From Octopus sinensis (Eukaryota), in contig NC_042997.1 in NCBI RefSeq assembly GCF_006345805.1, positions 192,820,001 to 192,884,000 on the forward strand: a DNA stretch of 64,000 bases, in the 5' to 3' direction. Under the pieces are notes generated by a model. That model was not told where the DNA came from. It saw nothing but the letters and a program-made list of their open reading frames with translations, and did no database searches. This document shows, in pieces, positions 27,727 through 62,654 of the stretch (position 1 is its first letter; the number at the start of each line of letters is the position of its first letter). The position numbers were made by a program, and so were the translations under genes.

Positions 27727-27808
<82 letters not shown>

Positions 27809-28366: not shown

Positions 28367-28435
<69 letters not shown>
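27720..28435. repeat. Compound (TA)/(TG)/(TATG) microsatellite, about 715 bp
   Basis: Almost unbroken purine-pyrimidine alternation. Confidence 0.95.
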
Positions 28436-39547: not shown

Positions 39548-39569
39548 GTAAGTTTGCTTTTAACCTTAA

Positions 39570-42630: not shown

Positions 42631-42914
42631 ATTATTATTATTATAGTGCAGAATAAAATGTCGAAAATCAATTTTTATCAACCAACATTTTTTCTACTTA
42701 TACTACATGTTATTTTCCAATCTCAGTAAATTTTAACATAAACCAAGTTATTTCCCTTGAAATGGGTAAAGCTTTCAATTTTGTTTCGCTATCATTCAAG
42801 AGATCACTAACTAGATGGATTTAAAGCTTCATAACTAGTTGCTTATAATTCTGGTATACCTTTGTACTCGGTCAGTTTTCTCACTCTCTTCCATCTATAA
42901 AAGCCTTGTTTGTA

Positions 42915-43380
42915 TGTCATCATCATCATCGTTTAACATCCGCTTTCCATGCTATCCTGGGTTGGACGATTTCACTGAGGACTGGCAAACCAGATGGCTG
43001 CACCAGGCTCCACTCTTGATCTGGCAGGGTTTCTACAGCTGGATGCCCTTCCTAACGCCAACCACTCTGAGAGCGTAGTGGGTGCTTTTACGTGCCACCG
43101 GCATGGGGGCCAGTCAGGCGGTACTGGCATTGACCTCACTCGAATCTTTCTACACATCCCACTGGCACAGGTGTCAGTAAGGCGATGCTGGTAATGATCA
43201 CACTTGAATGGTACCTTTTACCTGCCGCCGGCATGGAAGCCAGTTAGCTGCTCTGGCAATGATCATGCTCAGATTGGTGCTCCTATCACCCTACTAGCAC
43301 GGGGCTCAAGTGCCAGTAAGGCGACGCTGGTAACGATCACACTCGAATAGTGCCTTTTATGTGCCACTGGCATGGGCAGT
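42915..43380 (-). mobile_element. RTE LINE 3' UTR with internal repeats
   Basis: (ATC)n tail, ctggatgcccttcct motif, repeated aaggcga(t/c)gctggtaa(t/c)gatcacact blocks. Confidence 0.7.
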
Positions 43381-43730
43381 AACTTTTCCTGAACATCCTC
43401 CAGGAATGGACATCTTTGACAAACAGTACAATAAATGTTTGATGTGATTTCATTCAACAGCACAAAATCCATTTACTAAGCATGTCAGTGAACGTAAACT
43501 CATGTCATAGTCTGTTCTACTTGTGAGAAGAAATACAATTCACCTCATTCTTTACAAATGCCAAATCTTTCTATATATGACAATCTCCTTTAAAGGCTAC
43601 AGACTCCACCTAGCCAAGACCACATTACAAAGGTTTAATTTCCTCTTCATAGCCAGGTGAAACGGTAGCAATGAACAGCTGGCCCTCCAGCATTACAGTA
43701 TTGATTGCATACATAGGAGAGGACACCACC

Positions 43731-43765
<35 letters not shown>

Positions 43766-44775
43766 AGATAAATTCAATGCCATCTCTTTTATAAACAATG
43801 AGAATTATAAACAAATGAATTGCTAGAGAGAACCTAAAGGGGTCTGTGGCCCATGTGTTCTTGGTGATCCATTATACCCATAATCCAAGCACTTTACTTT
43901 CAAGGCCTAAGTCCACCTTGCTCTGAGTATAAATACTGCTCGGTGGTTCAATTCGGGGACACCACTGCAGGAACAAAATGACTTGCAAGTGACATTTGTT
44001 CCACCCCTCTGTGATCTGAGTTCAGACCTTGTCAAAATCAACATTGCATTTCTCCCTTTCAGGGTCACCAAAAGAAAAAGTGTTAATCCAGGACTGTGGA
44101 TTGACTCAACTATTAGAGGATCAGGCAAGATGCTTTGCCCTATCGCTTCCAGTCCTTTGTATTCTGACAGCAGCACTTGCTACAACATTGGTGCAAGGCT
44201 GTGTCAGTCCAAGTTGGTGGCCTTTCCCCTGTATAGACATCAGTGGCATAGACAGGAAAGATTTTTGAGAACATGCATGGTCAACATTCTGCACTCACAT
44301 GAGTTAGAGAGACAGTATTGTCTGTTGTCATTTCCATTGACAAATCGTCCTTTTGCTCTGCACATTTGAAGACAAATGGAATGGAAACTTTGTTGCTTGA
44401 TAAAACAGATATGGGTTAGTAGCAGGAAAACTGTAAAACAATGCCTTAAGTATATGTATTCATCTAACCCATGCTAACACAGAAAAACAAAGGAATATAT
44501 ATAGTCCTAGCACCTGTGCCATTGGCATATGTAAAAAGATTCAAGCGAGGTTGTTGCCAGTACCACCTGACTGGCCCCCGTGCTGGTGGCACGTAAAAGC
44601 ACCCACTACACTCTTGGAGTGGTTGGCATTAGGAAGGGCATCGAGCTGTAGAAACACTGCCAGATCAAGACTGGAGCCTGGTGCAGCCATCTGGTTTGCC
44701 AGCCCTCAGTCAAACCGTCCAACCCATGCTAGCATGGAAAGAGGACGTTAAACAATGGTGATGATGATGATGATG

Positions 44776-45125
44776 GGTGTGGTTGTGTGGTTGAGATTAT
44801 TTCCCGACCATATGGTTCCTGGTTCAATGCCACTGTGTGACACCTCAGGCAAGTGTCTTTTTCTGTAGCCCCAGGCTGACCAAAGCCTTGTGAGTGATTT
44901 TTCTAGATGGAAACTGAAAGAAGCTCATCATATGTGTGTATGTGTATCATTTGGTGTCTCCTTGTCTTGTCATAAAAACATGTTTGGCCATAGGGAAATA
45001 TTGCCTTACTCAGTAACTGGTGAGGGTTGGTGACAGGAGGGGCATCTAGCTGTAGAAAATCTGCTCTCATCAAAACGTCCAACCCATGCCAGCATGGAAA
45101 ACAGACATTAAATGATGATGATGGT
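44776..45125 (+). mobile_element. SINE B-head variant carrying an RTE-type 3' tail
   Basis: tRNA/CORE-like head followed by gacaggaggggcatctagctgtagaaa...ccatgccagcatgg...(gat)n. Confidence 0.65.
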
Positions 45126-46540
45126 TGATATATATATATATATATATATCCCTCTCTCTTTCGGAGAGGCACAAGCAGCTACATGCACATATACATACAC
45201 GGCAGTAACTTCCGCCTACCAAATTCTATCACAAAGCTTCGGTTGGCCCGGGGCTATAGCAGAAGACGCTTGCCCAAAGTGCCATGCGGTGGGACTGAAC
45301 CTGAAACCATGTAGCTAGAAACCAAGCTCCCTACCACACAGCCATGATGATGATGATGATATATATATATATAAAAATTAAATGAATATAAAATTAGCTT
45401 AGTTATGACCTTGTTATATTTTCTCTTAGGCATCACACATTTATTAAATATTCCACATTTTCTGTATTCAACCACAAGGCCTTTTATTTACTTATCCATT
45501 ACGTATTTATTCAATATATCTTTTATTTACTACAACTTGTTTACTGTAATGAGCTATAATTTTTGTTTACATAGCTGTTGATTGTTTATATATACATTGC
45601 ATCCAGTTTTATTTACTTAACAGTAAACTGTTCATTTACTGTAACCTGCTTATTCTTCATATGTAACTATGCTCCATTTTAATTATTTCAATATGTTTCA
45701 TTTGCTTAATTATGACCTGTTTTACTTACATACATCTGACCTGTTTTCTTCTAGTTCCTCTTGAATATATCCTCTTTAATATTTTGTCATCATCATAATG
45801 TTATTGTCCAGTTTTCCTTGCTTGCATAAGTCAGACATTGAGGTAGATTTTCTGCTGTCAATACTCACCTGTTTCCAAATCAGGTAATATTTCCCCCATG
45901 GCTAGACATGTTTTCACAGAAAACCAGTGATGAATGACAATGTTTATATTATGCAATATCAAGACAAAGAAAAATAAGCATACGAGCATACACACACACA
46001 TACAATGAGCTTCTTTCAGTTTCTGTTGACCAAATCCTCCCACAAGTCTTTGGTCAGCCCAGGGCTATACTAGAAGACATTTTTTGAAGGTGTCAGTAGG
46101 ACTGAACCCAAAGCAGTCTGGCTGGGAAGCCAACTTCCTAACTACACAGCCATGCCTGCACTAACTCCTCCTCTGAATTTGGAGCAACTAATTTGTGTCA
46201 CACCAACAGGATATATTTGTCAATAGATACCATCTTGCTAAATCACTGTCATGGGACATATCAAATGTACAGTCCTCTTTCCATGACTCACTTGATTTTT
46301 CTGAAACTAATCTATGCTTAAGGCAGCAAGTTGATAGAACCATTAGCATACCAGGCAGAATGCTTAGCAGTATTTTGTCGGTCTCAACATTCTGAGTTCA
46401 AATTTCGCCAAAGTTGACTTTGCCTTTCATCATTTTGTGGTTGATAAAATAAGAGTACCAGTTGAGCGCTGGGGTTGATGTAATTGATTTAACTACTCCT
46501 GGGTATGAGTATAAAGGTGGGGCAAAAAATTGCATCCTTC

Positions 46541-46758
46541 TTATTTCTTTATTGCCCACAAGGGGCTAAACATAGAGGGGACAAACAAGGACAGACAAAG
46601 GGATTAAGTCAATTACATCGATCCCCAGTGCGTAACTGGTATTTATTTATCGACCCCAAAAGGATGGAAGGCAAAGTCGACCTCGGCGGAATTTGAACTC
46701 AGAACGTAACGGCAGACGAAATATTGCTAAGCATTTCGCCCAGTGTGCTAACGATTCT
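46541..46758 (-). mobile_element. SINE family A
   Basis: High-identity reverse copy. Confidence 0.85.
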
Positions 46759-47569
46759 GCATCCTTCTGTCAATCCATGTTGAGCCAGTGTAACAGAGTA
46801 GGCTCATCAAACCAATATGATCTCATGTTCAAATTCACAGCCTAGACATCAGACCATGGTTGGTGGAGAGAGCATGCTGTGGCCCTCATTCTGCAGTGAA
46901 CTGAATATGGGCAGTCCAATCCTAATCCGAATCTGTGTTTACATAATAAATGTGGCTACATTATCTCACTGAAGTCAGCACTTGTTTCTGTTGCTTCAAC
47001 CTTCTTTATTTGCTGTATCTTTACATTGTTAGAGTTGTCTAAACTTAAAAACCTTTTAGTTGCAATCCCTGTCCCATTCACTTACATAATTCTTTTTTTA
47101 ATCCCACATTACCCTTAATCTCTCACTTGATTTCTAAAGATTTGGAGCAGTATACTTCATCACAGGCCTATGAAACAGCATCTACACATTTGCTTAAACC
47201 ACTAGAAACAGCAGCTAAATCTCTCTCAAACAACACCTTTATGAAACATGCAAGGACGCATTGGATGATGGAATCCTAAATAGATTATACCTAAAAATAA
47301 AATGACGGGTGGCTTGGTCTAGGCTGGAATTATCATGATCTCATCATTGTTTAACATCTGCCTTCCATTCTAGTATGGGTGAGATGGTTTCACAAGAGCC
47401 AGCAGGCAGAAGCCTGCACCAGACTTCTGTGACTGTTTTGGCAGGGTTTTTACAGCTGGATGCCCTTCCTAACAGTAACCACTTTGCAGAGTGGAATGTT
47501 TAAAATATTAAGTCTGTTCATCCAGTGTTGATCTTTAAGGGGATTGTTTTGTAGGTAGACATTATTATT

Positions 47570-47892
47570 ATGGCTGTGTAGTTAAGAAGCTCACTTCTCA
47601 ACCATGTGGTCTCAAGTTCTGTCCCACTGTGTAGCACCTTGGGCAAGGGTCTTCAATGTTGCCCCCAGAATTGAACAGACTGAAAATGAAAGAAGACTCT
47701 GTGTGCGTGTGTGTATGTACTTTTGTCTTGACATCATGTGATGGTTTTAAACAAGCATCACTGTCATACAAGCATTATTACCTTGCTTGGAAGCAGGTAA
47801 GAGTTGGTGACAGGAAGGGCACCCAACTGTAAAAACCTGCCTCAACGAATTCCGTCTGACCCATGCTAGCATGGAGAAGTGGACATTAAATC
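47570..47892 (+). mobile_element. SINE B-head variant with RTE-type tail
   Basis: Same structure as 44776-45125. Confidence 0.65.
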
Positions 47893-48539
47893 ATATTTGT
47901 ATGTCCCACCAATCACTTGTCTTGTTTTATTGGCAATCTTATTTGGTCAAGCTTATTTGGATTCCTTTGACTCTGGTCATTCACCCATCACATGAAATAG
48001 TTCTTCTGTGACTGAACAATGCATATCTTTGCTGAGTGACCAATGCTATTGCTACTATGTTATCTACCCATCAACTAAACAAAGCTAGTCTCAAGAACAA
48101 GCTGCTATTTATTCTGATAGTTTGCATCAGCATGAAATAAAAACAGCAAAATTGCATGTTTGAGAGACAAAATGATAGTTAGGCTTCATGTATTGCCCTT
48201 TGTTAAAGATGGGGAATAAAGAAAACATTTGTATGTTCATTTTCAAAAAACATTTCACCAGAGATTTTCGTGGTCTTCTATAAACATGTGATCTGCTGCA
48301 ATATCCATAGTCCATGGTACTGTAACGTACAATCTGCTACTAAGACCTTACTTGATATTGATTATTAAGGCAAATCAACAAAGACTCTATCTGACCTGAT
48401 CTAATAAAAAGGTAATCAACAAATGCTGAAATTTTAATCCCCCTAAAGTTCAAACCAATATCACTAGACTTAGCACAGTTTTCTCTCTCTAATGCAATTG
48501 AAAGATTTTGGTAGAGGTATGACATTAACAGAAGACATT

Positions 48540-49062
48540 ACTCTCTTTACTCTTTTACTCGTTTCAGTCATTTGACTGTGACCATGCTGGAGCACCACCT
48601 TTAGTTGAGCAAATCGACCCCAGGACTTATTCTTTGTTAGCCTAATACTTATTCTGTCGGTCTCTTTTGCTGAACTGCTAAGTTACAGGGATGTAAACAC
48701 ACCAACATTGGTTGTCAAGCGGTGTTGGAGGGACAAATACAGACACACAAACATATACACACACATGCATATATATATACGACGGGCTTCTTTCAGTTTC
48801 CGTCTATCAAATCCACTCACAAGGCTTTGGTCGGCCCGAGGCTATAGTAGAAGACACTTGCCCAAGGTGCCACGCAGTGGGACTGAACCTGGAACCATGG
48901 TTGTCCAGTAGTGGTGGAGGACAAACACAGACACAAAGGCACACACACACACATACACATAAATCAGGCTATAGTAGAAGACACTTGCCCAAGGTGCCAT
49001 GCAGTAGAACTGAACCTGGAACCACGTGGTTGGGAAGCAAACTTTTTACCACACAGCCACCA
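48540..49062 (-). mobile_element. SINE family B with partial internal duplication
   Basis: ggctatagtagaagacacttgcccaagg block occurs twice. Confidence 0.8.
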
Positions 49063-49162
49063 GTTCTGATCATTTACTAACCAAATCTTAAATGTCACCT
49101 ACAATAGATTACTGCTAACTTACTGGGGACATAGGTCATTCACCTGATTTACTCATTAATAT

Positions 49163-49591
49163 GGTATAACACTGGCAGAAACGTTAGCGCACCGGACGAA
49201 ATGCTGAGCAGTATTTCGTCTCTCTTTACGTTCTGAGTTCAAATTCCGCCGAGGTCGACTTTGCCTTTCATCCTTTCGGGGTTGATAAATTAAGTACCAG
49301 TTATGCACTGGGGTTGATGTAATCGACTTAATACCTATGTCTGTCCTTGTTTGTCCCCTCTGTGTTTAGCCCCATGTGGGTAATAAAGAAATAGGTATTT
49401 CGTCTGTCTTTACGTTCTGAGTTCAAATTCCGCCGAGGTCGACTTTGCCTTTCATCCTTTCGGGGTCGATAAATTAAGTACCAGTTACGCACTGGGGTCG
49501 ATGTAATCGACTTAATACCTATGTCTGTCCTTGTTTGTCCCCTCTGTGTTTAGCCCCTTGTGGGTAGTAAAGAAATAGGTATAACACTGGC
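49163..49591 (+). mobile_element. SINE family A dimer with one 14-bp TSD
   Basis: TSD ggtataacactggc at 49163-49176 and 49578-49591; second unit starts at ggtatttcg (49394). Confidence 0.9.
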
Positions 49592-50029
49592 TCTATTTTG
49601 GGTTTTTTTGTTTTGTTGTTTTTTTCTGTCTCTTCTATTACTGCTACGACAACCTCTGTTCTTCTGAACCAACTTGATGCATTCCACTCCGTTTCATCCC
49701 GCTCAGCCTGACACCTGTCTCTTCTCTTCCAATCATTCCTTTTGTGCCTTTGCTCCAAAATTCCACTTAAACACTTTGTCCAATTTTCATTTGCCATAAT
49801 TATAACCTTCGAGTACTCTCAATAACTCACATCTGTTGTAGTCATATTAGGTGTGTGTGACAAAATGTAGAGCAAACTGTGTGTTGTCACATTTTTTATG
49901 AAAATACAGTGTATTTTTAATTACTTCTAGATTTGTTAATCTATGTTTCTAGTTTACCCTTTCTTCCAGTTGCTAAAACAACTCACTATGATAATCCTTA
50001 TATCTCAGTTGATTTATAGCTCCAGATTA

Positions 50030-50644
50030 TATGTATGTATGTGTGTGTGTGGTGTGTGTGTGTGTATCTATGTATGTATGTATGTATGTATACATATATA
50101 TGTATGTGTATATACATATATATGTATGCATGTGTATATATATGCATGTGTATATATAAATGTATGCATGTGTGTATATATATATATGTATGTATGTATG
50201 CATGTGTGTATATATATATATGTATTATGTATGCATGTGTGTATATATATATATATATGTATTATGTATGCATGTGTATATATATATATGTATGTATGCA
50301 TGTGTATATATATATATGTATGTATGCATGTGTGTATATATATATGTATTATGTATGCATGTGTGTATATATATATATATATGTATTATGTATGCATGTG
50401 TATATATATATATGTATGTATGCATGTGTATATATATGTATGTATGCATGTGTATATATATATATGTATGTATGCATGTGTATATATATATATGTATGTA
50501 TGCATGTGTATATATATATATGTATGTATGCATGTGTATATATATATATGTATTATGTATGCATGTGTATATATATATATGTATGTATGCATGTGTATAT
50601 ATATATATGTATGTATGCATGTGTATATATATGTATGTATGTAT

Positions 50645-50682
<38 letters not shown>

Positions 50683-50719
50683 GTATGTGTGTATATATAT
50701 GTATGTATGTATGTATGCG

Positions 50720-50750
<31 letters not shown>

Positions 50751-50866
50751 GTATGTGTGTATATATATGTATGTATGTATGTGTGTGTGTATATATATAT
50801 GTATGCATGTGTGTATATATATATGTATGTATGTGTGTATATATATATATATGTATGTATGCATAC

Positions 50867-50897
<31 letters not shown>

Positions 50898-50950
50898 CAT
50901 GTATATATATATATATACACACAGACACACACACTCACATACATTTTTAT
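50030..50950. repeat. Compound (TA)/(TATG)/(TGCA) microsatellite, about 920 bp
   Basis: Seen directly; higher-order unit tatgtatgcatgtgta(ta)n. Confidence 0.95.
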
Positions 50951-51782
50951 GTATGTACATACATATAAAACACTTGTGACTTCATTTTCCATTGATTGTA
51001 TTTATAAATCAATGCAAAATAGACGCTTCAAAGTTTGTTGACTTTAAAATTTTATTGCTTTATCTATATTGTCAGTGACTTCACTGTCAAGCTGCATTAA
51101 TTCTTACCAAGTCTCACAGCAGAATATATATACTGTTACCATACATATATTTGTTCAGCTGTTGTCTGTTGTTATTTTCTCTATACTAGCTTTGGCAGAC
51201 TTTGAAGGCTTCTGTAAGCTGGATAATCTCATATCTAGTTAATCTATGTATAATAAGTAGGCTCGCCTTAAATCTTGCTCCTCTAATAACCGTGCGCATG
51301 TTCATCCACAGATTTAGGATTATAGTAGGAGGAGGAATGCCAGACACTCTGTGAGTTAAAATATATCACCGAGTCAAGTGAAACAGTCTGAAAATTCATG
51401 TTGTTCTATGAGGATACAAAGACAAATTTCTGTTGATGGAACTATCATTTTTTGCATCGTTCGACACATTCAAACTGGATTTGTAAAATGTTAACCAACT
51501 TATTTTTATTTCCATTATCAAGTTACATTTTCTTTCATATGTAATCTAACAAACGAAAGCCGTAAAGGTGGGGGGAAAAAATAGATGTTTTACTGTTATA
51601 CTTTTCTTTGTTTATTTTTACATTCATTTACTTTGTTGTCTGTGACTTCTGTCAGATCTTCTTCAAATATTGCTATCTTTAATACTGGAAATATTCTTAT
51701 AAACGAGACTAAAAATATATTTCTTGGATGTTATTCATCTGAATGATTTCCCTGCTTTAAGTGTTCCAGTTCACTTGCACCG

Positions 51783-53024
51783 ATGAATAACAATCCTCAG
51801 TTTTCTCATTCATATAGCAACCTAGCTAATGGTTACTATAACTACCCCGCTAACCAATGGTACCAGCCGGTTCCTTATAATATTACCCCTAATGGCAATG
51901 TCCCATCTCTGGTTACCTCAAGTAACTCCTCTACGACTACCAATTCCAAAAACACCAACAATAATTCTAACAGTTCCATTAATGCCATACAGCCAAGCGC
52001 ACCTCCCCTGCCCCCTCCTCCCCCATATACTGTATTCCCATCTAATACCCAACATTCAGACACCAGGGCCCATTCGGCACCACCTCCTAGCTACTATCAA
52101 TCTCTCACCTTCTCACTTCCTCCGGCTACCCAGTTCTCCCCTTCCAACTTCTCTCCTCCCCCCATCAACCAAAGTTTCCCCACCGGCCCCACTAACCAAT
52201 GTTCCCCTACCAGCTTCTCTCCTCCTCCCCCCTATAACCAGTGTTCCCCTCCTGGCTTCTCTCCTCCCTCCTATAATCAACGTCCTCCTACTAGCTTCTC
52301 TCCTCCTCCTAACCAATATTCCTCACCCAATGTCCAACATTCTTCTTCAAATGGTAATCTCAGTAATTGCTCAACTCCACCTTCTCCCACCCACACTCAG
52401 TATCCCCCATCACCTACCCACTACTACCCTTATCCCTATGGCTACCCTTCTCTTATCAATCATTTTGCCACTTATCGACCTCCGCCCCCTCTTGACTATA
52501 TTCCCAAATATATTGATGATCAATGGAAAGAAAGGATATGCAAGTTTTTGGACTTACCTTATGACCCCCGAGCTAATACTAATAATAACCCTATCTTAAA
52601 AGGGGGCTATTACGGGACTGTTTATTCTGTAATGAGTGATGGCAACTGTTTTTTCCGCTGCATCAGTCAGGAGTTGACCGGACAGCAGACATATCATTCC
52701 AAATTACGAGCAAAATTGTGTGAATTTATTGAAAGCCATAGAGAAAAATTTGAAGCTTATGTCGACTGCAGCTTCTCAAAACATCTTCGGAGAATGAAAA
52801 GAGACAGTACATGGGCAACTCATGCTGAAATATTCGGCATGGCAACTCTTCTTGGTTGTTCCATTTATGTCAACACAAAATATGGTTTCACAACCGAATG
52901 GCTGCAGCATGACCCAGTGTTTCAGTATCACACGCCACTGCCAGGCTACCATCGACAGCCAGCTCTGGGGAAAATCTATGTGATTCATGTCGGAGAAGTA
53001 CATTTTAATCTCTTCGTTGTGTGA
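51783..53024 (+). CDS. Intronless OTU-family cysteine protease (putative deubiquitinase) with Pro/Tyr-rich N-terminus, nested in the WIP intron
   Basis: 413-aa ORF; SDGNCFFR (D286, C289), WATHAEIFGMA, HFN (H407, N409); in-frame stop 39 nt upstream; AATAAA at 53807 and 53849. Confidence 0.88.
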   Translation: MNNNPQFSHSYSNLANGYYNYPANQWYQPVPYNITPNGNVPSLVTSSNSSTTTNSKNTNNNSNSSINAIQPSAPPLPPPPPYTVFPSNTQHSDTRAHSAPPPSYYQSLTFSLPPATQFSPSNFSPPPINQSFPTGPTNQCSPTSFSPPPPYNQCSPPGFSPPSYNQRPPTSFSPPPNQYSSPNVQHSSSNGNLSNCSTPPSPTHTQYPPSPTHYYPYPYGYPSLINHFATYRPPPPLDYIPKYIDDQWKERICKFLDLPYDPRANTNNNPILKGGYYGTVYSVMSDGNCFFRCISQELTGQQTYHSKLRAKLCEFIESHREKFEAYVDCSFSKHLRRMKRDSTWATHAEIFGMATLLGCSIYVNTKYGFTTEWLQHDPVFQYHTPLPGYHRQPALGKIYVIHVGEVHFNLFVV

Positions 53025-53474
53025 AGAAGAATTTTCAAGAAACGGATTAAATTTACTCATTCTTCAGTCGTAATCAACCATCTTACCTGTTTTTCGCACA
53101 AAAGTAAGAGTTGCTTTACACTCTGCTGTTATTCATTTTCTGTAACAAAACCATTTATCTGGACTCTTCCTGGTCTGTTTCATCCTCATCTCCAAATTAT
53201 AAACTTACCGTGAATATCATTATAAACTCTGTACTCGTTTGGCTGCTGTAGTGCTAATTGGAATTTCTTTATGAAGAACCAGGAATGTTATAATTAACCT
53301 GTGTCTATAGGAATTTTTAAAACAAAAAAAAATATAGAAAAGATTCATAGTGAGTTGTAATTTATTCTTTCTTTAAAATTCTAAGTTTTATTGTTCTTAC
53401 AACTTAGTTTATTATAAAATTTAAGTTAACTTTGTTGCTTTATAATTGAAGTCTACTGTTATGACTTTTGCTTA

Positions 53475-53745
53475 TATCATCATCTTCATCATCTTCATCA
53501 TCATCTTCTTCATCTTCTTCATCATCATCATCTTCTTTTTCATCATCTTCATCATCATCATCATCATCTTCATCTTCATCATCATCTTCATCATCATCAT
53601 CTTCATCTTCATTATCATCATCATCATCATCTTCATTATCATCTTCATCATCATCATCATCACCATCATCATCATCTTCATCATCATCTTCATCATCATC
53701 ATCATCTTCTTCTTCTTCTTTATTATTATTATTATTACCAGTTCA
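53475..53745. repeat. (TCA)/(TCT)/(TTA) trinucleotide tract
   Basis: Seen directly. Confidence 0.95.
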
Positions 53746-54132
53746 ATGCTACTCAAATTCTTGTTAATGTCTGACCAAGTAATACTAACTTCAAATTGTA
53801 GTGTTGAATAAAAGCATCCATTATGTGAAATGAATTGTTCTTCTCACCAATAAATTTAAACTTTTGAGGCAATGAACTGTCAGGTTATGATACACACATT
53901 GGTAAATTTGATGTAAGACCTTCAGGTATAATTTGTTGTTGTTTGCATGTATCCAGACATTTATCATTTCTGAATATGTGCAGATGACAGCATCATTTCA
54001 CATAACGAATGCTATTATTCAACTCTACAGTTCAAAGTTAGTATTGCTTGGTCAAACAGTAACAAGAATTTGAGCAGCCTTGAATAGATTTGTTCTTCTA
54101 AAAGTCATTTCTCTATTATTATATCATTATTA

Positions 54133-54474
54133 CAGTGTGGAAGGTGTTTATAAGCCATTTAAGAAACACACAAAATCCGTTAGATTCACTTCAACATTTC
54201 AATTTAATTTGTCAAAATATTTCCGTCGCTTTGAGACCGCGACCTGTTCACTGACAAAATTCCGTGCTGCATCCCTTAGATTTTGTCAGTGAACAGATCG
54301 TGGTCTCAAAGCGACAAAGATATTTTGACAAATTAAATTGAAATGTTGAAGTGAATCTAACAGTTTTTGTGTGTTTCTTAAATGGCTTATAAACACCTTC
54401 CACGCCGCAATTGTTTTCGTTCCAGCACACGATCTCAGATCAGGTCACTTGCTATGCAAGTACATCTCTGTAAT
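54133..54474. mobile_element. Fold-back element, Penelope-like candidate
   Basis: 124-bp arms (54137-54260, 54280-54403), 19-bp spacer; atatcattatta repeated at 54121-54132 and 54475-54486 (TSD-like). Confidence 0.8.
54208..54260 (-). ncRNA. Minimal hammerhead-like motif, G3-C8 variant
   Basis: UUUGUCA-GUGAACA-G-GUCGC-ggucucaaa-GCGAC-GGAAAUAUUU-UGACAAA: 7-bp stem I, 5-bp stem II, palindromic AAUAUU; A13>G in this copy; mirror copy at 54280-54332 more decayed. Confidence 0.5.
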
Positions 54475-54691
54475 ATATCATTATTATTATTAAGATTATA
54501 TCGTTAGCATGCCACACATAGTGCTTGATGGCATTTCAGCCACCTTTATGTTCTAAATTCAAATTTCACCAGGGTAGACTTTGCTCTTTATTTTTTCAGG
54601 GTTACATCAACTCCAGTTGATCACTGGGGTTGATGTAACTGACTTACCCCACTCCTCTGAAATTACTGGCCTTGTGCCAAAATTTGAAACA

Positions 54692-56385
54692 TTATTATTA
54701 TTACTACTACTACTACTTATTTTTAATTTACATGTTTGTTACAATCACTTGCCAAGACACACCCAGCATCCTAGGGCGAGTGAAGGCTAAGAAATGTTAC
54801 AGTATGATTGAAAGCTTGGAGAGGGGAAGTGGTAGGGGCAGTAGTGAAATATATCTTCATGCAATACAACACAGACATTTAAATTCATAGGGGCTTTCTG
54901 AGGATGTGAGCAGAACTTGTTAGCATAATCTTTTGGATTTCTCTGAGACATGGTTTTCCTGCGACGTTGTCTAGATGTTTCTGACATCCTTTTTTTTTAT
55001 CATATCAAGAGTATCTACAAATACAGGAATAGTTTTTACCTCTTGCATTTCAATTTCTGGGTCCTTAAATTTACTTATTTTGTCAAATTCTTTGACAGAT
55101 ATATTTGTATCAGTGGGAACACTTACATCTATTAGTCTACAAGTATTTTCTTCCCTGTCTTTTATGACTATGTCTGGTTGATTAGCCTGGATCGTTCTGT
55201 TGGTGTTGACTGGAAAATCCCAGAGGATAGTGACATTTTTACCTTCAATGGCTGGCTCAGGATGATGTTCATACCAGTAAGCAGGAATGTTGATTTTTAT
55301 AGTGTTTACATATTTTCCAATGTAAATACTGTCCTCCCCTATTGTGGCAATTTTTGTATTTGTTTGGTGTCAGCACTGGACATCCCTAGATTAGATGGTC
55401 TATTGTTTCTTCAAATGTGTCACAGAATCTGCATTTGGGGTCAGAACCATTTTGAAGAACATTAGCCTAGGTGTTTTTGGTAAGCAAGCTTTGGTCTTGT
55501 ATTGCTAATATGAAACCTTCAGTCTCTGCTTTCAGTCCTGAACTTCTCAGCTACTGATGGCCTGTTGCTTGGTCTACATCAGCATTTCGGCTTCAAAGTA
55601 TACACTATCCACGATGAGGCTTCTGGCCCCACCGCTCCTCAATTTGTTTCTGCCCTTTCTTTTTTGCAGTCTGTTTGATTCGTTTTGCTTGTTTGGTAGC
55701 AGTGGTTTCAGGTTCTTCATCTAATTTAGAGTTAATGCCGAGTTCCCTTGTGAATTTGCAAGCTTCCTTGACAATAGAATGTAATTTTTTGCCGCCTTTG
55801 TGTTTGCACACAAGCAACAGCATCCAGTCCTCTGTATTAGATAAGTACCTGTTCATTGCTATTGTGGAGGTCCTATAGCACAGTTCTACCTGCATCGTTC
55901 CTCTTCCCCTAATACTTCTAGGTAGGTACAGAGAATCAACATCTGCATTTGGATGGTGCATGTTCTTAGATGTTAGTAGTTTTCTTATCATCCTGTCCAG
56001 GTGTTGGAGCTCTATAAGATTCTAGTTAATGATGTTAAAACTGTATTGGACTACTGGAAGTGCAAGGGTGTTAATGGCTTCATTGCAATTTTTGGAATTG
56101 AGTCCAGTTTTTAGTATGAGTCTTATTCTTCTGTAATATTCCTTTCTTATTTTTTCCTTTATGGTAGCATGTTGTATACCATCTCCTTCGTTTATCCCCA
56201 GGTATTTACTGCTTTCTTGTGGGTCAAGCTCCTTGATGGTAGTGTCAGTATCTAATTTAACAGAAGCTGTTTGCTTCAGCTTGCCACTTACAAAAGTTGC
56301 TTTAGCACACTTATCAAGGACAAAATCCATTCCGATGTCATTACTGAATTCCTTAACAATTGATAACAGCCCTGCTATCAATAAA
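54692..56385 (-). mobile_element. 5'-truncated R4/Dong-like non-LTR retrotransposon (RT C-terminus, CCHC, restriction-like endonuclease)
   Basis: KYLG, LYLPRSIRGRG, CRFC...ETIDHLI.GC, NQPDIVIKD...LIDVSVP...KE.DK; stops and frameshifts; 3' end runs into (TAG)(TAA)n. Confidence 0.88.
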
Positions 56386-56469
56386 ACAAGTACCAGTTGA
56401 ACATTGGGGTCACTGTAATTGAGTCATCCCCTCCCCCAAAATTGCTGCCCTTGTGGAAAAATTTGAAAC

Positions 56470-56502
<33 letters not shown>

Positions 56503-56713
56503 GGCGGTGAGCTGGCAGAGTCGTTAGCACTCTGGATGACATGCTTAGCGGTATTTTGCCCCTCGCTTTGTTCTGAGTTCAAATTCTGCCAAGGTTGACT
56601 TTACCTTTCATCATTTCAGGGTCAATAAAATAAGTACCGGTTATGCACTGGGGTCGATGTAATCAACTCCATCCCTTCCCCCAAATTTCAGGCCTTGTGC
56701 CTCCAGTTGAAAA

Positions 56714-56747
<34 letters not shown>

Positions 56748-56950
56748 ATGTTGTTAGCATGCTGCACGAAATGTTTAATAGTCTTTCATCTGTCTTCGTG
56801 CTCTGACTTCAAATGCTGCTGAGGTTGACTTAGCCTTTCATTGTTTTAGGGTTAGTAAAATAAGCACCAGTTGATCCCTGGGGTTAATGTAGTTGACTAG
56901 CCCCTCTCAATGAAATTTCAGGCCTTGTGCCTATAGTAGAAAAAAATCAT
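56386..56950 (+). mobile_element. Array of three SINE A variants separated by (TTA)n
   Basis: Repeated aagtaccagtt..ctggggt..atgta units, tails in (TTA)n. Confidence 0.75.
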
Positions 56951-57476
56951 TATCATTGTCAGATTTAACCAATCTTATCATAGATTATGTTTCAGAGAAG
57001 AAACAGCCCAAAAGATATCAGTCACATGGAAAAATAGTGTTAATTCATTCAATGTAGGAAACATCGAAAAGCTAATTAGGAATAATTAGGCAACGAGAAA
57101 ATGACACTTCCATGCTATCATGATGAATGACATTCTGGATTGACGATAAACATTTTCTATTTAGCTGACCTTTGTCACCAAAGGTGTGCAGTGATGGCAC
57201 ACTGAATGAAAGGAATTTAAGCCACAGAAATGTAAATACATGGTTCTAGTCAGAGAAAGTGGGAGAGAGGGAGAAAAAGAGACAGACAGACAGACAGGCA
57301 GAGAGGGGTTGGGGGTAGTAAACTCTGTTCATCGTCTTCTGTTTTATTCCATTCAATAACTTCTACCATATTTTTCTGTTTAATATAGAAAATATGGAAA
57401 AGGTATTTAATGGAATGAAATTAATGAGAGAAAATGAATTAATTCATTACACATCTCTCTCTCTCACTCTCACTCA

Positions 57477-57481
57477 CTCAC

Positions 57482-57552
<71 letters not shown>

Positions 57553-57557
57553 AACAC

Positions 57558-57649
<92 letters not shown>

Positions 57650-57652
57650 CAC

Positions 57653-57702
<50 letters not shown>

Positions 57703-57750
57703 CACAACACACACACACACACACACACACAAAACACACACACACACACT
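57477..57750. repeat. (CA)n microsatellite with CAA interruptions
   Basis: Seen directly. Confidence 0.95.
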
Positions 57751-57863
57751 TGTAAAGCATTTACATTTTTACTTCTTTATGGTTTAAATTTATTTGATTG
57801 GGTTTCCTATCTCTGCACACTTTCTGATAAAATGTCAATTAATTAAATTGAAAGTATCACAAA

Positions 57864-57869
<6 letters not shown>

Positions 57870-57904
<35 letters not shown>

Positions 57905-58513
57905 TGGTGGTGCTCCAGCATGGCCACAGCTCGTGAGCTGAAACTAGATAAAATAAAAATAATTCTTTCTACTGGAATAATAATGATATTAATAATCAAT
58001 AATAATAATATTAATAATAACTATCAATAATAATGATATTAATAATAATCTTTTCTACTGGAAGCACAATGCTTCAAATTTGTGGGGAGGGGACTAGTCA
58101 TTTACATCGACCTCAGTGTTAAACTGGTACTTATTTTATTGACCCCTCGAAAGGATAAAAGGCAGAGTCAATCTCGGCAGAATTTGAACTCAGAACATAG
58201 CGACAGGTGAAATACTGTTAAGCGTTTCATCCAGCATGCTTACAACTCTGCCAGCTTGCCACCTTATTAATAATTATAATAATTATAATTATTATTATTT
58301 CAAATTTTTGCCACAAGGGCAGCAATTTTGGGGAAGTTGGGGTGAGTTAATTACATCGACCCCAGTGTTAAACTGATACTTATTTTATTCACCCCTCGAA
58401 AGGATGAAAGGCAAAGTTGACCTTGGCAGAATTTGAACTCGGAATATAACAGCAGACGAAATACCACTAAGCATTTCGCCCGGTGTGCTAACGATTCTGC
58501 CAGCACACCGCCC

Positions 58514-58544
<31 letters not shown>

Positions 58545-58830
58545 ATTAATAATCCTTTCACAAGGTTAGTTGATTACATTAACCTCGGTGCTCAACCGGT
58601 ACTTATTTTATTACCCTGAAAAGGATTAAAGTTAACCTCAGCAGGATTTGAACTTTCCATAAAAGCCAGAAGAAATGTCGCTAAGCATTTTTCGTCTGAT
58701 GTGCTAACGATTCTGACTGTAATAATAATCATGGTTTCAAATTTTGGCTCAAGGCCAGCAAGTGTGGGGGTGGGGGTACTTATTTCACAACCCTGAAAGG
58801 ATGAAAGGCAAAGTCAACCTTGGCCAAGTA
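57870..58830 (-). mobile_element. Array of three SINE A variants in (TAA)n
   Basis: Reverse-oriented equivalents of the 56.4-kb array, plus a SINE B tail fragment. Confidence 0.7.
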
Positions 58831-59029
58831 ATAAAACATAATGTTTGTTTTTACATAATTTCTTTTATATTTAGGTGTAATGTTACAAGAAACATTAAAC
58901 TTCATTGTATACTATTGTTTCATTCTTTAGTGGGTGGTAGAAAGATAGATTTTTAGTCTGGACTTAAATTTCAAATGGGATTAACAATGATTTTTATCCA
59001 GCTGAAAAATATGAGATTTTCACATATTC

Positions 59030-59710
59030 TGTGACATGAAGTATTCCAGATTGCAAGGCAACGTGCTAAAGAGAATTGAGACATTGTTGGGGAAAAGTAT
59101 ATTTGGAATGGTAATGGCACATTGGCCCTTGCTGATACTGAAAACAAAAGGACCTGGAAGTGCTACTGAGAAGTTGTTGAATGAGGATAATGCATGGAGA
59201 GAGGTGGGGTTACTCGAAATAAACCCAACAGAGATACCAATCATTGAAGTTACCAGGCATTGATCATCATCATCTTCATTTAACATCCATTTTCCATGCT
59301 GGCATGGTTTCTACGGCCGGTTGCCCTTCCTAATGCCAACCACTCTAAGAGTATAGTGGGTGCTTTTTACACGCCACTGGCACAGGTGCCAGTGACACAA
59401 CACCGGCATTGGCCATGACTACAATTTCATTTGGCTTAACAGATTTTCTCAAGCACAGTATATCGCCAAAGGCCTTGATCATTTGTCACTGCCTCCATGA
59501 GGCCCAATGTTTGAACAGTGTTTTTAATGTGCCAGTTAGGCAACACTGGTATTGGCTTTGACTACAATTTCACTTGACTTGATGGGTCTCCTAAGGTCTC
59601 AGTCACTTGTCATTGTCTCTGTGAGGCCCAACATTCAAAGATCATGCTTCACCACCTCGTCCCATGTCTTCCTGAATCTACCTCTTCCACAGGTTCCCTC
59701 CACCATGCAG
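59030..59710. mobile_element. RTE LINE fragments (59030-59200 plus, 59262-59710 minus)
   Basis: Plus: EVFQIARQRAKEN*DIVGEK...EKLLNEDNAW. Minus: VEGTCGRGRFRKTWDEVVKHDL plus 3' UTR. Confidence 0.7.
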
Positions 59711-60050
59711 CTAAAATCAAATCTTGTTTCTGCATTTTAAAGTAACATAATTTTTCCTTGCTTACTTTCCTCTTTGTTGAGTCTTAAGGGTATTGGCCAT
59801 GGAATGGTTCATCTGTTTATTCTGTAGACTTATGTCTTCTTTTGCGTGTATCCTTTCAATTACCTTGTCATTATTGAAATATTTTCACTTAATATTTTTT
59901 CTCTTTTATGCTGGGTGAAATGCTTAGCAGTACTTCGTCTGCCGTTACATTCTGAGTTCAGTTCTGCCGAGGTTCACAGAGCATAAACAGCCAGAAGAAA
60001 TGTCTTCAAGCATTTCACCTTATATGCTTACAGTTCTACTAGCTTGCCTA

Positions 60051-60083
<33 letters not shown>

Positions 60084-60084
<1 letters not shown>

Positions 60085-60173
60085 TGAGAAAGCAACCATA
60101 CCATGGGGATGTGCCAATACATACAGATAGAGAAATTAAGGCCAATAGGCCAGATATAGTTGTCAGAGATCAT
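60084..60173 (+). mobile_element. R4/Dong-like endonuclease-domain fragment fused to (AAT)n
   Basis: DVPIHTDREIKANRPDIVVRDH directly downstream of an (AAT)n run. Confidence 0.7.
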
Positions 60174-60789
60174 CTAGGTTAAATAAGTACCAGTTACACA
60201 CTGGGGTCAATGTAATTGACTTAATCCCTTTGTCTGTCCTTGTTTGTCCCCTCTGTGTTCAGCCCCCTGTGGGCAATAAAGGAATAAATATTTTTTCTCT
60301 TTATTAAAAAAGTTGCTATACAGTTAAGAAGGTTGTAATGCAAACACATGGTTTCAGGTTCAATACTACCACATGGCCCAAAACCTTGCCAGTGGATTCA
60401 GTAGACGAAAACTAAAAGACACCTGTTATATGTATATGTGTTTATATATGTGTGGGTTTGTGTGTGTGTGTGTGGCTATTTATGTTTCCTTGTCCAGAGA
60501 GTGTGTTAATTGTAAATAAACATCATACAAACAGTGTTACTTGTGTGCAACCTTCCGCAAAAACATGTCCAGCCATTATACTGTAAAAAGCTTTCAGTTC
60601 ACTCTGTAAAGTGGTTGGCATTAAGAAGGGCAACCAGCTGTAAAACCATTCCAAAACAGACAATGGAGCTTGGTGCAGTTCTCTGGCTTGTCAGCTCCTG
60701 TTAAACCATCCAGCCCATGCCAGCATAAAAGACAGACATTAAATGATGATGATGATGATGATGTAGTAGCAGTTTGGTTCTCATCCTGG

Positions 60790-60945
60790 ACCCAATACAA
60801 CTGACCACGTATTCACTTTATGGCAGGTCTTTGAGAAATCATGGGAATATTACCAAGTAGTGTACATTTGCTTCGTAGACCTCAAAAAGGCTTACAACTG
60901 CATGTTTTGAGGCATGCTGTGGAGGGTTTTGCAGGAGTTCATTTT
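60790..60945 (+). mobile_element. RTE-type reverse transcriptase fragment
   Basis: TTDHVFTLWQVFEKSWEY...CFVDLKKAYN. Confidence 0.75.
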
Positions 60946-61415
60946 TAGTATTCTTGTTTGTGAGAGCAGTCGTGTTTATTTTAGATATTTTCATTTTAAA
61001 AATCATCTCCGGCTAATCATTGAGAGGATGTTGGTGTTGCCTTGGCGGAGGTTTGCACTCTCTGAGTGTTCTTGTTTGTTATTTATTTTATCAATTGACA
61101 AAAAGCTAGTCAGCCTTGGCATAAACCAGATGGCATTAAATACTGCAAACCCTGTTTTGTTTTGTTTTGTTTTTTTTGTTACATTCAACAATTTCATTCA
61201 TCTCACACCAAGATATATAGATTTTTATTTCATTGCTTTTTTTTCATTTTTGTTCTTTCCTTCTTTGTCTAAGTCAGTTATAACCCCCTTCGTATCTAGG
61301 ATGCTATATGGGAATGCAATGATAAGAATACTTCTGATTTAGTTATCACTGGTAACGATTTGATAGAGTTGGAAGATGGATACAAGAACAAGTAGTTTGC
61401 GTGAATGTGTAAATA

Positions 61416-61981
61416 TTGGGTTGTCCGGAAAGTTCGTGCCGAATTTTAAAGGATAGAAAAAGATCAATAAATACTTGCCATTACATTTTTAATCAACCAA
61501 ATATGAACCATTTTGTTGTACAATGCGTCTTCATCTTTCCTTTAACTTGAAAATACCCTCTTCCCAGAACTTAGGTGGTTTCATAGCAAAGAATTCATCA
61601 AGGTATCTTTTTACGGCATCCAAGGAATTGAAATTTTTACCATTAAGACTATTCTGCAGAGACCTGAATAAGTGGAAATCCGAAGGAGCAATATCTGGTG
61701 AATATGGAGGGTGGGCTAACACACCCCAGCCGAGCTGCAGAAATTTTTGTCTGGTTCCCAAAGCATCAAGTGCCAAAAATGAACTTTCTTATCTTCCAAT
61801 TTAAAGGGTTACAGAATTAACACATGTTATAGGAACATAAACCTTCCTCCACAAAAAGATAGCTTAAACTGTGCTCTAAATAGAGGTGTAGTCAAATCCT
61901 ATTTTATGGACTCAACCATGTTCTAAAATAAGTCGAAAGGTAAGCTACTATAAATTGGCACGAACTTTCCGGACAACCCAA
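61416..61981 (-). mobile_element. Non-autonomous, internally deleted mariner with perfect TIRs
   Basis: 25/25-bp TIR TTGGGTTGTCCGGAAAGTTCGTGCC, TA TSD; HPPYSPDIAPSDFHLFRSLQN C-terminal transposase fragment. Confidence 0.95.
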
Positions 61982-62549: not shown

Positions 62550-62654
62550 ATATTACAAAACGTGGCCATTTCCATGATGTATATGAATTTCCACCTCCTG
62601 AGCCTTTTAGTGGGTGTGCAAAGACATACCCTAGTCGTAATTCAAGAAATGCTG
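62550..62654 (+). CDS. WIP: WIP/verprolin WASP-binding-domain exon
   Basis: ttctcttctag| acceptor, CTG|gtaagt donor, 105 nt, phase 1-1; DITKRGHFHDVYEFPPPEPFSGCAKTYPSRNSRNA aligns with WIP ESRFYFHPISDLPPPEPY..TKSYPSK. Confidence 0.92.

What the first reader, a model, noticed from the sequence alone, without database searches (positions are those of the whole stretch)
51783..53024. Nested intronless OTU protease with a PSAP motif and four PPxY late-domain-type motifs
Seen: an unbroken 413-codon ORF inside a 23-kb intron where every transposon ORF is broken. It has an intact OTU Cys289/His407/Asn409 set. The N-terminus has PSAP (aa 71-74), PPPY (79-82), PPSY (101-104), PPPY (148-151), PPSY (161-164) and about five NQxSPxxFSPPP repeats. 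Established: P(S/T)AP binds the TSG101 UEV domain and PPxY binds WW domains of NEDD4-family ligases; the combination is used by retroviral Gag, ARRDC1 and LITAF. Inference: a deubiquitinase that docks on ESCRT-I and NEDD4 ligases, an architecture I do not recognise among standard OTU subfamilies. It sits inside a gene whose product acts in endocytic actin assembly.
Basis: partly seen in the sequence, partly recalled or inferred. Interest (0 to 1): 0.8.

Follow-up and report, generated by a model that had tools for sequence, protein, structure and literature searches.

The report
Conserved nested OTU deubiquitinase gene
An intact single-exon gene for an OTU-type ubiquitin-cleaving protease sits inside an intron of the actin regulator WIPF and has been kept there under strong purifying selection in two related animal lineages. 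Its proposed PSAP docking motif is not conserved, and its PPxY cluster is specific to one lineage.

Summary
The 413-codon ORF (51783-53024, +) is a real gene, not a transposon remnant.

- **Conservation:** Intact orthologues exist in six sequences from two lineages. One 92-kb contig has the gene in the same WIPF intron and the same orientation.
- **Selection:** dN/dS is 0.03-0.08 on the OTU domain and 0.2-0.3 on the N-terminal half.
- **Fold and active site:** The DGNC cysteine and the C-terminal histidine are invariant among relatives. The model (pLDDT 87) matches OTUD1, OTUD5 and OTUD3.
- **No fusion:** Splicing from the upstream WIPF exon into the ORF would hit a stop, so it is a separate cistron.

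- **PSAP:** It is absent from all five orthologues and is expected by chance (P=0.09).
- **PPxY:** The four motifs exceed composition (P=0.004) and persist in the sister species. They lie in a lineage-specific tandem-repeat expansion. The other lineage has 0-1.

Origin is unresolved: a retrocopy of a host OTU gene or a transposon-derived OTU. No transcript evidence could be obtained. I read this as a new lineage-restricted member of the OTU family, of moderate interest.

The parts
51783..53024 (+). Single-exon coding sequence, 413 codons plus TGA stop
   Evidence: Intact orthologous ORFs have the same start and the same stop position in L002, L003 and L001.
51783..52427 (+). N-terminal P/S/N/Y/T-rich low-complexity half (aa 1-215), presumed disordered. 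The first ~45 residues are partly conserved in both lineages.
   Evidence: Composition. dN/dS 0.21-0.27. Alignment.
52088..52345 (+). Tandem array of six 36-42-nt units (13-14 aa, NQxSPxxFSPPP-type). This is a lineage-specific expansion that carries two of the PPxY motifs.
   Evidence: It appears as a gap in the second lineage.
51993..52004 (+). PSAP (aa 71-74), not conserved in any orthologue
52017..52028 (+). PPPY (aa 79-82)
52083..52094 (+). PPSY (aa 101-104); PPNY in the sister species
52224..52235 (+). PPPY (aa 148-151), inside the tandem repeat
52263..52274 (+). PPSY (aa 161-164), inside the tandem repeat; PPFY in the sister species
52431..52511 (+). Conserved linear block (aa 217-243; 23 of its 27 residues identical in all six orthologues). 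Its first part is modelled as disordered. It contains YP[SA]L (52443-52454) and PPPPLDY.
52506..52547 (+). Pre-OTU helix (aa 242-255) carrying the D-x-Q-W-K-x-x-x-C motif. This motif is shared with a subset of invertebrate OTUs, including some Helitron-linked ones.
52593..53021 (+). OTU catalytic domain (aa 271-413)
   Evidence: Pfam. AF2 pLDDT 86.8. Foldseek OTUD1 4bop E=3e-9.
52647..52649 (+). Catalytic Cys289 codon in the DGNC motif
   Evidence: Invariant in 26- and 122-sequence alignments
53001..53009 (+). His407-Phe-Asn409 (His loop)
   Evidence: His is invariant in 26 sequences. The third position is D, N or E in all but one (M).
51124..51782 (+). Conserved 5' flank: candidate promoter or 5' UTR
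   Evidence: 87.4% identical to the sister species, against 77.3% at 4-fold sites
53025..53440 (+). Conserved 3' flank: candidate 3' UTR
   Evidence: 84.7% identity
53807..53854 (+). Two AATAAA hexamers (53807-53812 and 53849-53854), both present in the sister species
38797..39547 (+). Host WIPF-family proline-rich exon. The 3' end at 39547 is supported by the GTAAGT donor; the 5' end is approximate.
39548..62549 (+). Host intron (23,002 nt, phase 1) that contains the OTU gene
62550..62654 (+). Host WIPF exon encoding the WASP-binding peptide. The donor was assigned by eye.

Best explanation
This is a functional, single-exon host gene nested in sense orientation in a 23-kb intron of a WIPF-family gene.

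It encodes a two-part protein:
- The C-terminal 145 residues form an OTU papain-like cysteine protease. Cys289 in the DGNC loop, His407 and Asn409 form the catalytic set. A short pre-OTU helix packs on the core. By family this is a deubiquitinase that cleaves ubiquitin (or a ubiquitin-like modifier) from substrates.
- The N-terminal ~215 residues are a fast-evolving, proline/tyrosine-rich, presumably disordered region. I read it as a docking platform whose motif content differs between lineages.

Shown:
- The gene is intact in both lineages; its position in the WIPF intron is shown for the one orthologue with long flanks (L001).
- It is under strong purifying selection.
- It has the OTU fold and conserved catalytic residues.
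- It is not an in-frame extension of the upstream WIPF exon.

Inferred:
- Catalytic activity.
- An independent transcript.
- In the window's lineage, a tandem-repeat expansion created a PPxY array that could dock WW-domain proteins such as NEDD4-family ligases (about 0.4 likely).

PSAP is most likely a chance match. The only candidate docking motif conserved in all orthologues is a YP[SA]L (YPxL-type) motif just before the OTU domain.
For: - **Orthologues:** Intact orthologous ORFs occur in six sequences from two lineages, with the same start and stop position.
- **Synteny:** On L001 the order is WIPF proline-rich exon, OTU ORF, WIPF WASP-binding exon, all on the + strand.
- **Selection:** dN/dS is 0.032 and 0.083 on the OTU half, and 0.21 and 0.27 on the N-terminal half.
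- **Copy number:** An exhaustive profile search found only the two orthologue clusters below E=1e-100, then nothing until 3e-34. That fits a single-copy gene, not a repeat family.
- **Family:** Pfam OTU at 55.5 bits.
- **Catalytic residues:** D-G-N-C is invariant in 122 relatives. Cys and His are invariant in the 26-sequence alignment, and Asn409 aligns with D, N or E in all but one (M).
- **Fold:** AF2 pLDDT 86.8, pTM 0.85. Foldseek best matches are OTUD1, OTUD5 and OTUD3.
- **No transposon context:** No transposon protein remnants lie beside the ORF here or in L001. No terminal repeats flank it.
- **No fusion:** Joining WIPF exon end 39547 to either AG upstream of the ATG gives a stop after 9 or 5 codons. 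Joining it to 62550 is in frame.
- **Flanks:** They are more conserved than 4-fold sites: 87% and 85% against 77%.
- **PPxY:** Enriched over composition, P=0.004.
Against: - No transcript evidence was obtained. The related public contigs are genomic and collinear, not spliced or polyadenylated.
- The exact protein is not on record in the public gene collection, and no named annotated orthologue was returned.
- Protease activity and any binding are untested.
- Only two lineages were sampled.
- PPxY count falls to 1 or 0 in the second lineage.
- PPxY retention in the sister species is expected by chance (0.29).
Confidence: 0.7

Rival explanations
1. One reading: a deubiquitinase that docks on both ESCRT-I (PSAP to the TSG101 UEV domain) and NEDD4-family ligases (PPxY to WW domains), in the manner of late-domain proteins.
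For: PSAP and four PPxY motifs are present within about 95 residues. PPxY is enriched over composition.
Against: PSAP is absent from all five orthologues, including the one that is 87% identical, and is expected by chance at P=0.09. The PPxY array is lineage-specific. No binding data exist.
Confidence: 0.07
2. The N-terminal half is only a low-complexity or prion-like spacer. The PPxY matches are by-products of proline/tyrosine-rich composition plus a tandem-repeat expansion, with no WW-domain docking.
For: Two of the four PPxY motifs are sister repeat copies. The segment is missing in the second lineage, which has 0-1 PPxY. Conservation of key residues in the sister species is uninformative. 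dN/dS there is 0.2-0.3, against 0.03-0.08 in the OTU half.
Against: Four motifs against 0.70 expected. In the sister species the variable x position changed in two motifs while both prolines and the tyrosine were kept. The region is still under constraint (dN/dS well below 1).
Confidence: 0.4
3. Origin rival A: the gene is a domesticated OTU domain from a Helitron-type or other transposon.
For: - It is intronless and nested.
- Helitron proteins with OTU domains occur among its relatives: P0004 sits directly after a Helitron_like_N ORF, P0007 has a Pif1 helicase C-terminus plus three OTUs, and P0013 has the full RepHel.
- The pre-OTU motif is shared with P0004 and P0007.
- Four to five of the top 107 relatives carry Helitron domains, one an integrase and one a hAT domain.
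- Helitron OTU domains are described in the literature (PMC9741609).
Against: Per domain, Helitron-linked OTUs score only 42-55 bits, ranking below about 160 of 302 domain hits. Stand-alone invertebrate OTUs score 78-86 bits. The top rank of P0007 was a sum over three domains. No Rep or helicase remnant is nearby.
Confidence: 0.35
4. Origin rival B: the gene is a retrocopy, or an old single-exon paralogue, of a host OTU gene of the kind found in other molluscs.
For: Named hits among the best per-domain matches are molluscan proteins (Dreissena P0161 at 82.7 bits, Biomphalaria P0015 at 78.3, Mya P0164 at 72.6). P0161 is a multi-exon gene lying between ordinary host genes.
Against: Those proteins lack the pre-OTU helix motif and carry a C-terminal tail that is absent here. 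Identity is only 38-39% over the core. No poly(A) tract or target-site duplication is visible.
Confidence: 0.35
5. The ORF is an alternative terminal exon of WIPF, giving a WIPF-OTU fusion protein.
For: It is on the same strand as the host. AG dinucleotides with a pyrimidine tract lie 14 and 22 nt upstream of the ATG, and the one 14 nt upstream (ttccag) is conserved in the sister species.
Against: Joining the phase-1 donor at 39547 to either acceptor gives a stop after 9 or 5 codons. An in-frame stop lies 13 codons upstream of the ATG. The start codon and N-terminus are conserved in both lineages.
Confidence: 0.03
6. The ORF belongs to a still-mobile or recently mobile element rather than to the host.
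For: OTU domains are common in transposons (PMC9741609). The surrounding intron is repeat-rich.
Against: It sits in the same intron position in two lineages whose synonymous sites are saturated. It is single-copy in searches. dN/dS is 0.03-0.08. There are no element termini or partner genes.
Confidence: 0.02

Closest known systems
OTUD1 (human OTU domain-containing protein 1; PDB 4bop)
   Same: It is the best solved-structure match by sequence (E=1.9e-10, 44 bits) and by fold (E=3e-9, TMt 0.73). From general knowledge, OTUD1 is also a single-exon gene with a long low-complexity N-terminus before the OTU domain.
   Different: Identity is only about 20%. Invertebrate OTUs score much higher (78-86 bits). 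This protein ends four residues after the His motif, so it has no room for the C-terminal ubiquitin-interacting motif of OTUD1 (sequence; the UIM is from general knowledge). It has a pre-OTU helix motif. It is not an orthologue.
Stand-alone molluscan OTU proteins (Dreissena LOC127867825, Mya 'OTUD4-like', Physella LOC131939653, a Biomphalaria fragment)
   Same: They are the best-scoring named relatives, at 38-39% identity over the core, and of similar overall length (340-390 aa).
   Different: They have no proline-rich or PPxY N-terminus, no pre-OTU D-x-x-W-Q motif, and an extra cysteine-containing C-terminal tail. The Dreissena gene has introns and a different neighbourhood.
Helitron/Helentron-encoded OTU domains
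   Same: They share the OTU fold. The pre-OTU motif is shared with P0004 and P0007. P0004 has a proline-rich linker before its OTU. Helitron OTU domains are reported in the literature, with activity never tested (PMC9741609).
   Different: There is no Rep or helicase here. The gene is single-copy, syntenic and under purifying selection. Per-domain similarity is modest, at 42-55 bits.
Yeast Ubp2-Rup1-Rsp5 (a deubiquitinase coupled to a NEDD4-family ligase)
   Same: Possible working analogy. That deubiquitinase is held on a WW-domain HECT ligase and trims its products (PMC4276913).
   Different: Ubp2 is a USP, not an OTU, and is coupled through an adaptor. Here the docking motifs would sit on the enzyme itself. 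This is an analogy only, and no binding was tested.
ESCRT-associated deubiquitinases (AMSH, USP8; yeast Doa4 recruited by Bro1)
   Same: Possible working analogy for the invariant YP[SA]L. The ALIX V domain binds YPxL peptides (PMC4276913). My recollection is that Doa4 binds Bro1 through a YPxL-type motif; I did not verify this here.
   Different: The catalytic families differ (JAMM, USP). There is no MIT or rhodanese domain here. The motif match is four residues long and could be chance.

Membership tests
OTU cysteine proteases (Pfam PF02338) | Match to the family profile above the curated threshold | tested here: met
   55.5 bits against a cut-off of 23.3, E=1.1e-14, aa 285-367
OTU cysteine proteases (Pfam PF02338) | Catalytic Cys in the D-G-N-C loop | tested here: met
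   D286, G287, N288 and C289 fall in columns invariant in 122 relatives and in all six orthologues
OTU cysteine proteases (Pfam PF02338) | C-terminal catalytic His followed, two residues on, by Asp, Asn or Glu | tested here: met
   H407 is invariant in 26 sequences. N409 aligns with D, N or E in all but one (M).
OTU cysteine proteases (Pfam PF02338) | OTU fold | tested here: met
   AF2 pLDDT 86.8, pTM 0.85. Foldseek gives OTUD1, OTUD5 and OTUD3, then viral OTUs, with 67 hits at E<=1e-3.
OTU cysteine proteases (Pfam PF02338) | Isopeptidase activity on ubiquitin or a ubiquitin-like modifier | not testable with these tools
   No biochemical data
OTUD1 orthologous group | Closer to OTUD1 than to other OTUs | tested here: not met
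   OTUD1 scores 44 bits against 78-86 bits for unrelated invertebrate OTUs
OTUD1 orthologous group | C-terminal ubiquitin-interacting motif after the OTU domain (general knowledge) | tested here: not met
   The protein ends four residues after His407-x-Asn409
Helitron-encoded OTU | Fusion with, or adjacency to, Rep (HUH) and Pif1-type helicase | tested here: not met
   tblastn with 270 relatives, including full Helitron proteins, hits only the ORF itself, both in the window and in L001
Helitron-encoded OTU | Multi-copy, non-syntenic distribution | tested here: not met
   Only the orthologue clusters were found. Position in the WIPF intron is conserved.
Helitron-encoded OTU | Sequence affinity of the OTU domain | tested here: inconclusive
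   The pre-OTU motif is shared, but per-domain scores are only 42-55 bits
Late-domain-type ESCRT/NEDD4 clients (P[ST]AP plus PPxY) | Conserved P[ST]AP | tested here: not met
   Present only in the window sequence. Absent in 5 of 5 orthologues.
Late-domain-type ESCRT/NEDD4 clients (P[ST]AP plus PPxY) | Conserved PPxY | tested here: inconclusive
   Four in the window and in the sister species, one in L001, none in P0002, P0274 or P0275. Enriched over composition at P=0.004, but partly repeat-derived.
Late-domain-type ESCRT/NEDD4 clients (P[ST]AP plus PPxY) | Binding to the TSG101 UEV domain or to NEDD4 WW domains | not testable with these tools
   No interaction data
Independent nested gene | Own reading frame, not in frame with host exons | tested here: met
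   Splice-model joins
Independent nested gene | Own transcript with promoter and poly(A) site | not testable with these tools
   Only indirect evidence: conserved flanks and two conserved AATAAA hexamers

The most novel reading that the evidence does not exclude
A lineage-restricted OTU deubiquitinase has been wired into endosomal ubiquitin sorting by short linear motifs alone. An invariant YPxL-type motif would bind an ALIX/Bro1-family protein. In the window's lineage, a PPxY array newly made by tandem-repeat expansion would hold the enzyme on NEDD4-family ligases. That would make it an independently evolved counterpart of yeast Doa4/Ubp2 and animal AMSH/USP8, possibly built from a transposon-derived protease.
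Probability: 0.12. Interest if true: 0.6.

Novelty: new member of a known kind. Interest (0 to 1): 0.35.

Why it matters
If the gene is expressed, it adds a taxon-restricted deubiquitinase to the ubiquitin system of this animal group. No public gene set queried here returned it. It is also a clean example of a nested gene held in one host intron across deep divergence. The PPxY array illustrates how a tandem repeat in a disordered region could create a multivalent docking site on an enzyme. That is an interesting idea, but here it rests on motif matches in one lineage only.

Tried and rejected
- **Helitron origin as the leading reading:** The best non-orthologous hit, P0007, looked decisive (E=3e-34). 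Its score is the sum of three OTU domains. Per domain it ranks below about 180 of 302, so the claim was downgraded.
- **First structure prediction:** With only four close orthologues it was unusable (pLDDT 43). It was repeated with 122 sequences.
- **Transcript evidence from public contigs:** L002 and L003 are collinear with genomic sequence and bounded by repeats.
- **Exact-protein look-up:** Nothing on record.
- **Two metagenome scans for more orthologues:** Nothing found.
- **Literature search for the sample accessions, to name the taxa:** Nothing found.
- **Pfam on host exons and neighbouring ORFs:** No hits. The host was identified through the PDB instead.
- **Viral origin:** BFVD fold matches are weaker than cellular OTUD1.
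- **Rfam and tRNA scans:** Empty.
- **WIPF-OTU fusion:** Rejected on reading frame.

Full report
**Observation.** The ORF at 51783-53024 (+) has 413 codons and ends in TGA. All the stated motifs are at the stated residues: PSAP 71, PPPY 79, PPSY 101, PPPY 148, PPSY 161, four FSPP, C289, H407 and N409. It is the longest non-microsatellite ORF in the window. Its GC content is 45% against 37% for the window. The repeats are real: six 36-42-nt units at 52088-52345, which TRF reports as period 39, 2.9 copies. Pfam OTU scores 55.5 bits against a threshold of 23.3.

**Host gene.**
- + strand ORFs at 38782-39651 and 62405-62791 carry exons of a WIPF (WAS/WASL-interacting protein) homologue.
- The downstream exon matches the WASP-binding peptide of WIPF1 (PDB 9s9x_B, E=1.3e-5; also 2ifs and 1mke).
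- The upstream exon ends at 39547|GTAAGT and the next starts at AG|62550. Both are phase 1, and the join reads through in frame.
- Joining 39547 to either AG just upstream of the OTU start codon gives a stop after 9 or 5 codons. The ORF therefore cannot be an in-frame WIPF extension from that exon.

**Orthologues and selection.**
- A full-length protein search returned P0001 (417 aa, 87% identical, full coverage). It also returned P0002 and P0003 (73-74% identical over the C-terminal 46%). Two further close variants of P0002 exist.
- All have the same start region and the same stop position. The database call for P0003 had read through the TGA.
- The P0001 contig is collinear with window 51124-53865 at about 86%.
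- On the 92-kb contig of P0003 the order is WIPF proline-rich exon (L001 4.8-5.5 kb), OTU ORF (10.07-11.13 kb), then WIPF WASP-binding exon (19.45-19.57 kb). All are on the + strand. The nesting therefore predates the split of two lineages whose synonymous sites are saturated.
- Nei-Gojobori dN/dS is 0.115 overall for window vs P0001, split as 0.21 on the N-terminal half and 0.032 on the OTU half. For the other pair the values are 0.156, 0.27 and 0.083.
- The flanks are 87% (5') and 85% (3') identical, against 77% at 4-fold sites. In the second pair, conservation collapses about 0.84 kb upstream of the ATG. This fits UTR or promoter constraint but is indirect.
- None of the related contigs is a transcript.

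**Protease domain.**
- The OTU halves of the four orthologues with DNA in hand are 74-97% identical to the window's.
- In a 26-sequence alignment with distant relatives, Cys289 and His407 are invariant, and Asn409 aligns with D, N or E in all but one (M).
- D-G-N-C is invariant in 122 relatives.
- AlphaFold with four sequences failed (pLDDT 43). With 122 sequences it gave pLDDT 86.8 and pTM 0.85. That model shows a helix at aa 242-255 before the core and a disordered stretch at aa 216-233.
- Foldseek's best PDB matches are OTUD1 (3e-9, TMt 0.73), OTUD5 and OTUD3, followed by nairovirus OTUs. Viral predicted structures match less well.
- I conclude that this is an OTU protease with a complete catalytic set. 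Activity is inferred, not shown.

**Relatives and origin.**
- An exhaustive profile search found 4391 proteins at E<=1e-3, but only the two orthologue clusters and one further protein at E<=1e-30.
- That further protein, P0007, carries a Pif1-helicase C-terminus and three OTU domains.
- P0004 follows a Helitron_like_N ORF, and P0013 is a full RepHel with OTU.
- Four to five of the top 107 relatives carry Helitron domains.
- A pre-OTU motif (aromatic-x-P-V-D-x-x-W-Q-x-x-x-C-x-x-L) is shared with about 25 of them, including P0004 and P0007.
- This pointed to a domesticated Helitron OTU, but the lead of P0007 is a sum over three domains.
- Per domain, Helitron-linked OTUs score 42-55 bits. The best matches, at 78-86 bits, are stand-alone invertebrate OTUs, several of them molluscan.
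- One of these, from Dreissena, is a multi-exon gene lying between ordinary host genes.
- No Rep or helicase remnant or terminal repeat flanks the ORF.
- Origin is therefore open between a transposon-derived gene and a retrocopy or old paralogue of a host OTU.
- Helitron OTU domains are known, but their activity has not been tested (PMC9741609).

**N-terminal motifs.**
- In 20,000 shuffles of aa 1-215, PPxY occurs 0.70 times on average against 4 observed (P=0.004). P[ST]AP occurs 0.10 times against 1 observed (P=0.09).
- The sister species keeps four PPxY motifs, with x changed in two. With 85% identity in this region, keeping all 12 key residues has a chance of 0.29.
- PSAP is lost in the sister species and absent from the other four orthologues.
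- Two PPxY motifs lie in adjacent repeat units.
- The whole segment is a gap in the second lineage, where PPxY count is 1 (L001) or 0.
- No PPxY-rich N-terminus was seen among 114 other relatives.
- A block at aa 217-243 is conserved in all six orthologues (23 of its 27 residues identical), and its first part is modelled as disordered. It contains YP[SA]L, a YPxL-type motif. The ALIX V domain binds YPxL peptides (PMC4276913). This is a lead, not a result.

**Mechanism.**
- Most likely (0.7): a translated host gene whose product is an active OTU deubiquitinase, with a variable disordered docking region.
- WW-domain docking through the PPxY array in the window's lineage is plausible (about 0.4). 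It would resemble the Ubp2-Rup1-Rsp5 coupling of a deubiquitinase to a NEDD4-family ligase (PMC4276913).
- TSG101 docking through PSAP is unlikely.

**Limits.** There are no expression data and no annotated orthologue. The exact protein is not on record. Two metagenome scans found nothing. The taxa of the window and of the related contigs were not named by any tool.

**Verdict.** This is a new, lineage-restricted member of the OTU family. Interest is moderate.

Noticed in passing
window 41000-41600 and at least 25 other places (for example 3572-3769, 23824-24090, 36009-36265, 44571-44773, 62852-63054): A dispersed SINE-like repeat of about 270-340 nt, on both strands, 73-93% identical to the copy at 41000-41600. 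It accounts for many of the short ORFs in the introns.
   Followed up: partly
window 53742-53833 / 53993-54084 and 54129-54260 / 54280-54411: Two inverted-repeat pairs (87% and 92% complementary) lie just 3' of the OTU gene. The first AATAAA (53807) sits inside one arm, so part of the candidate 3' UTR may be a foldback or MITE-like insertion. The arm is also present in the sister species (L002 2429-2508).
   Followed up: partly
window 52431-52511 (aa 217-243): A block conserved in all six orthologues (23 of its 27 residues identical), modelled in its first part as disordered. It contains YP[SA]L and PPPPLDY.
   Followed up: partly
window 27530-28558, 49943-51041, 53446-53811, 57394-57846, 33774-34631: Long TA/CA-type microsatellite arrays, a (TCA)n array and a (CA)n array produce spurious ORFs of 90-340 aa. 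A tandem array of roughly 80-90 nt units lies at 33774-34631.
   Followed up: no
L001 10001-11143 (protein P0003): The public gene call for this orthologue reads through the TGA stop and starts 22 codons too early. The real ORF is 10067-11128.
   Followed up: yes
The pyrimidine tract and CAG 14 nt upstream of the ATG are conserved, so an acceptor there remains possible with a different donor.
   Followed up: partly
L004 8576-11839: On an unrelated 724-kb contig, a Helitron_like_N ORF is followed directly by a helicase C-terminus, a proline-rich linker and an OTU protein (P0004). This shows the Helitron-OTU architecture among distant relatives.
   Followed up: partly
window 55605-56381 (-): Two adjacent minus-strand ORFs (128 and 119 aa) have no Pfam match at E<=0.01. 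They are possibly remnants of a mobile element, but were not identified.
   Followed up: partly
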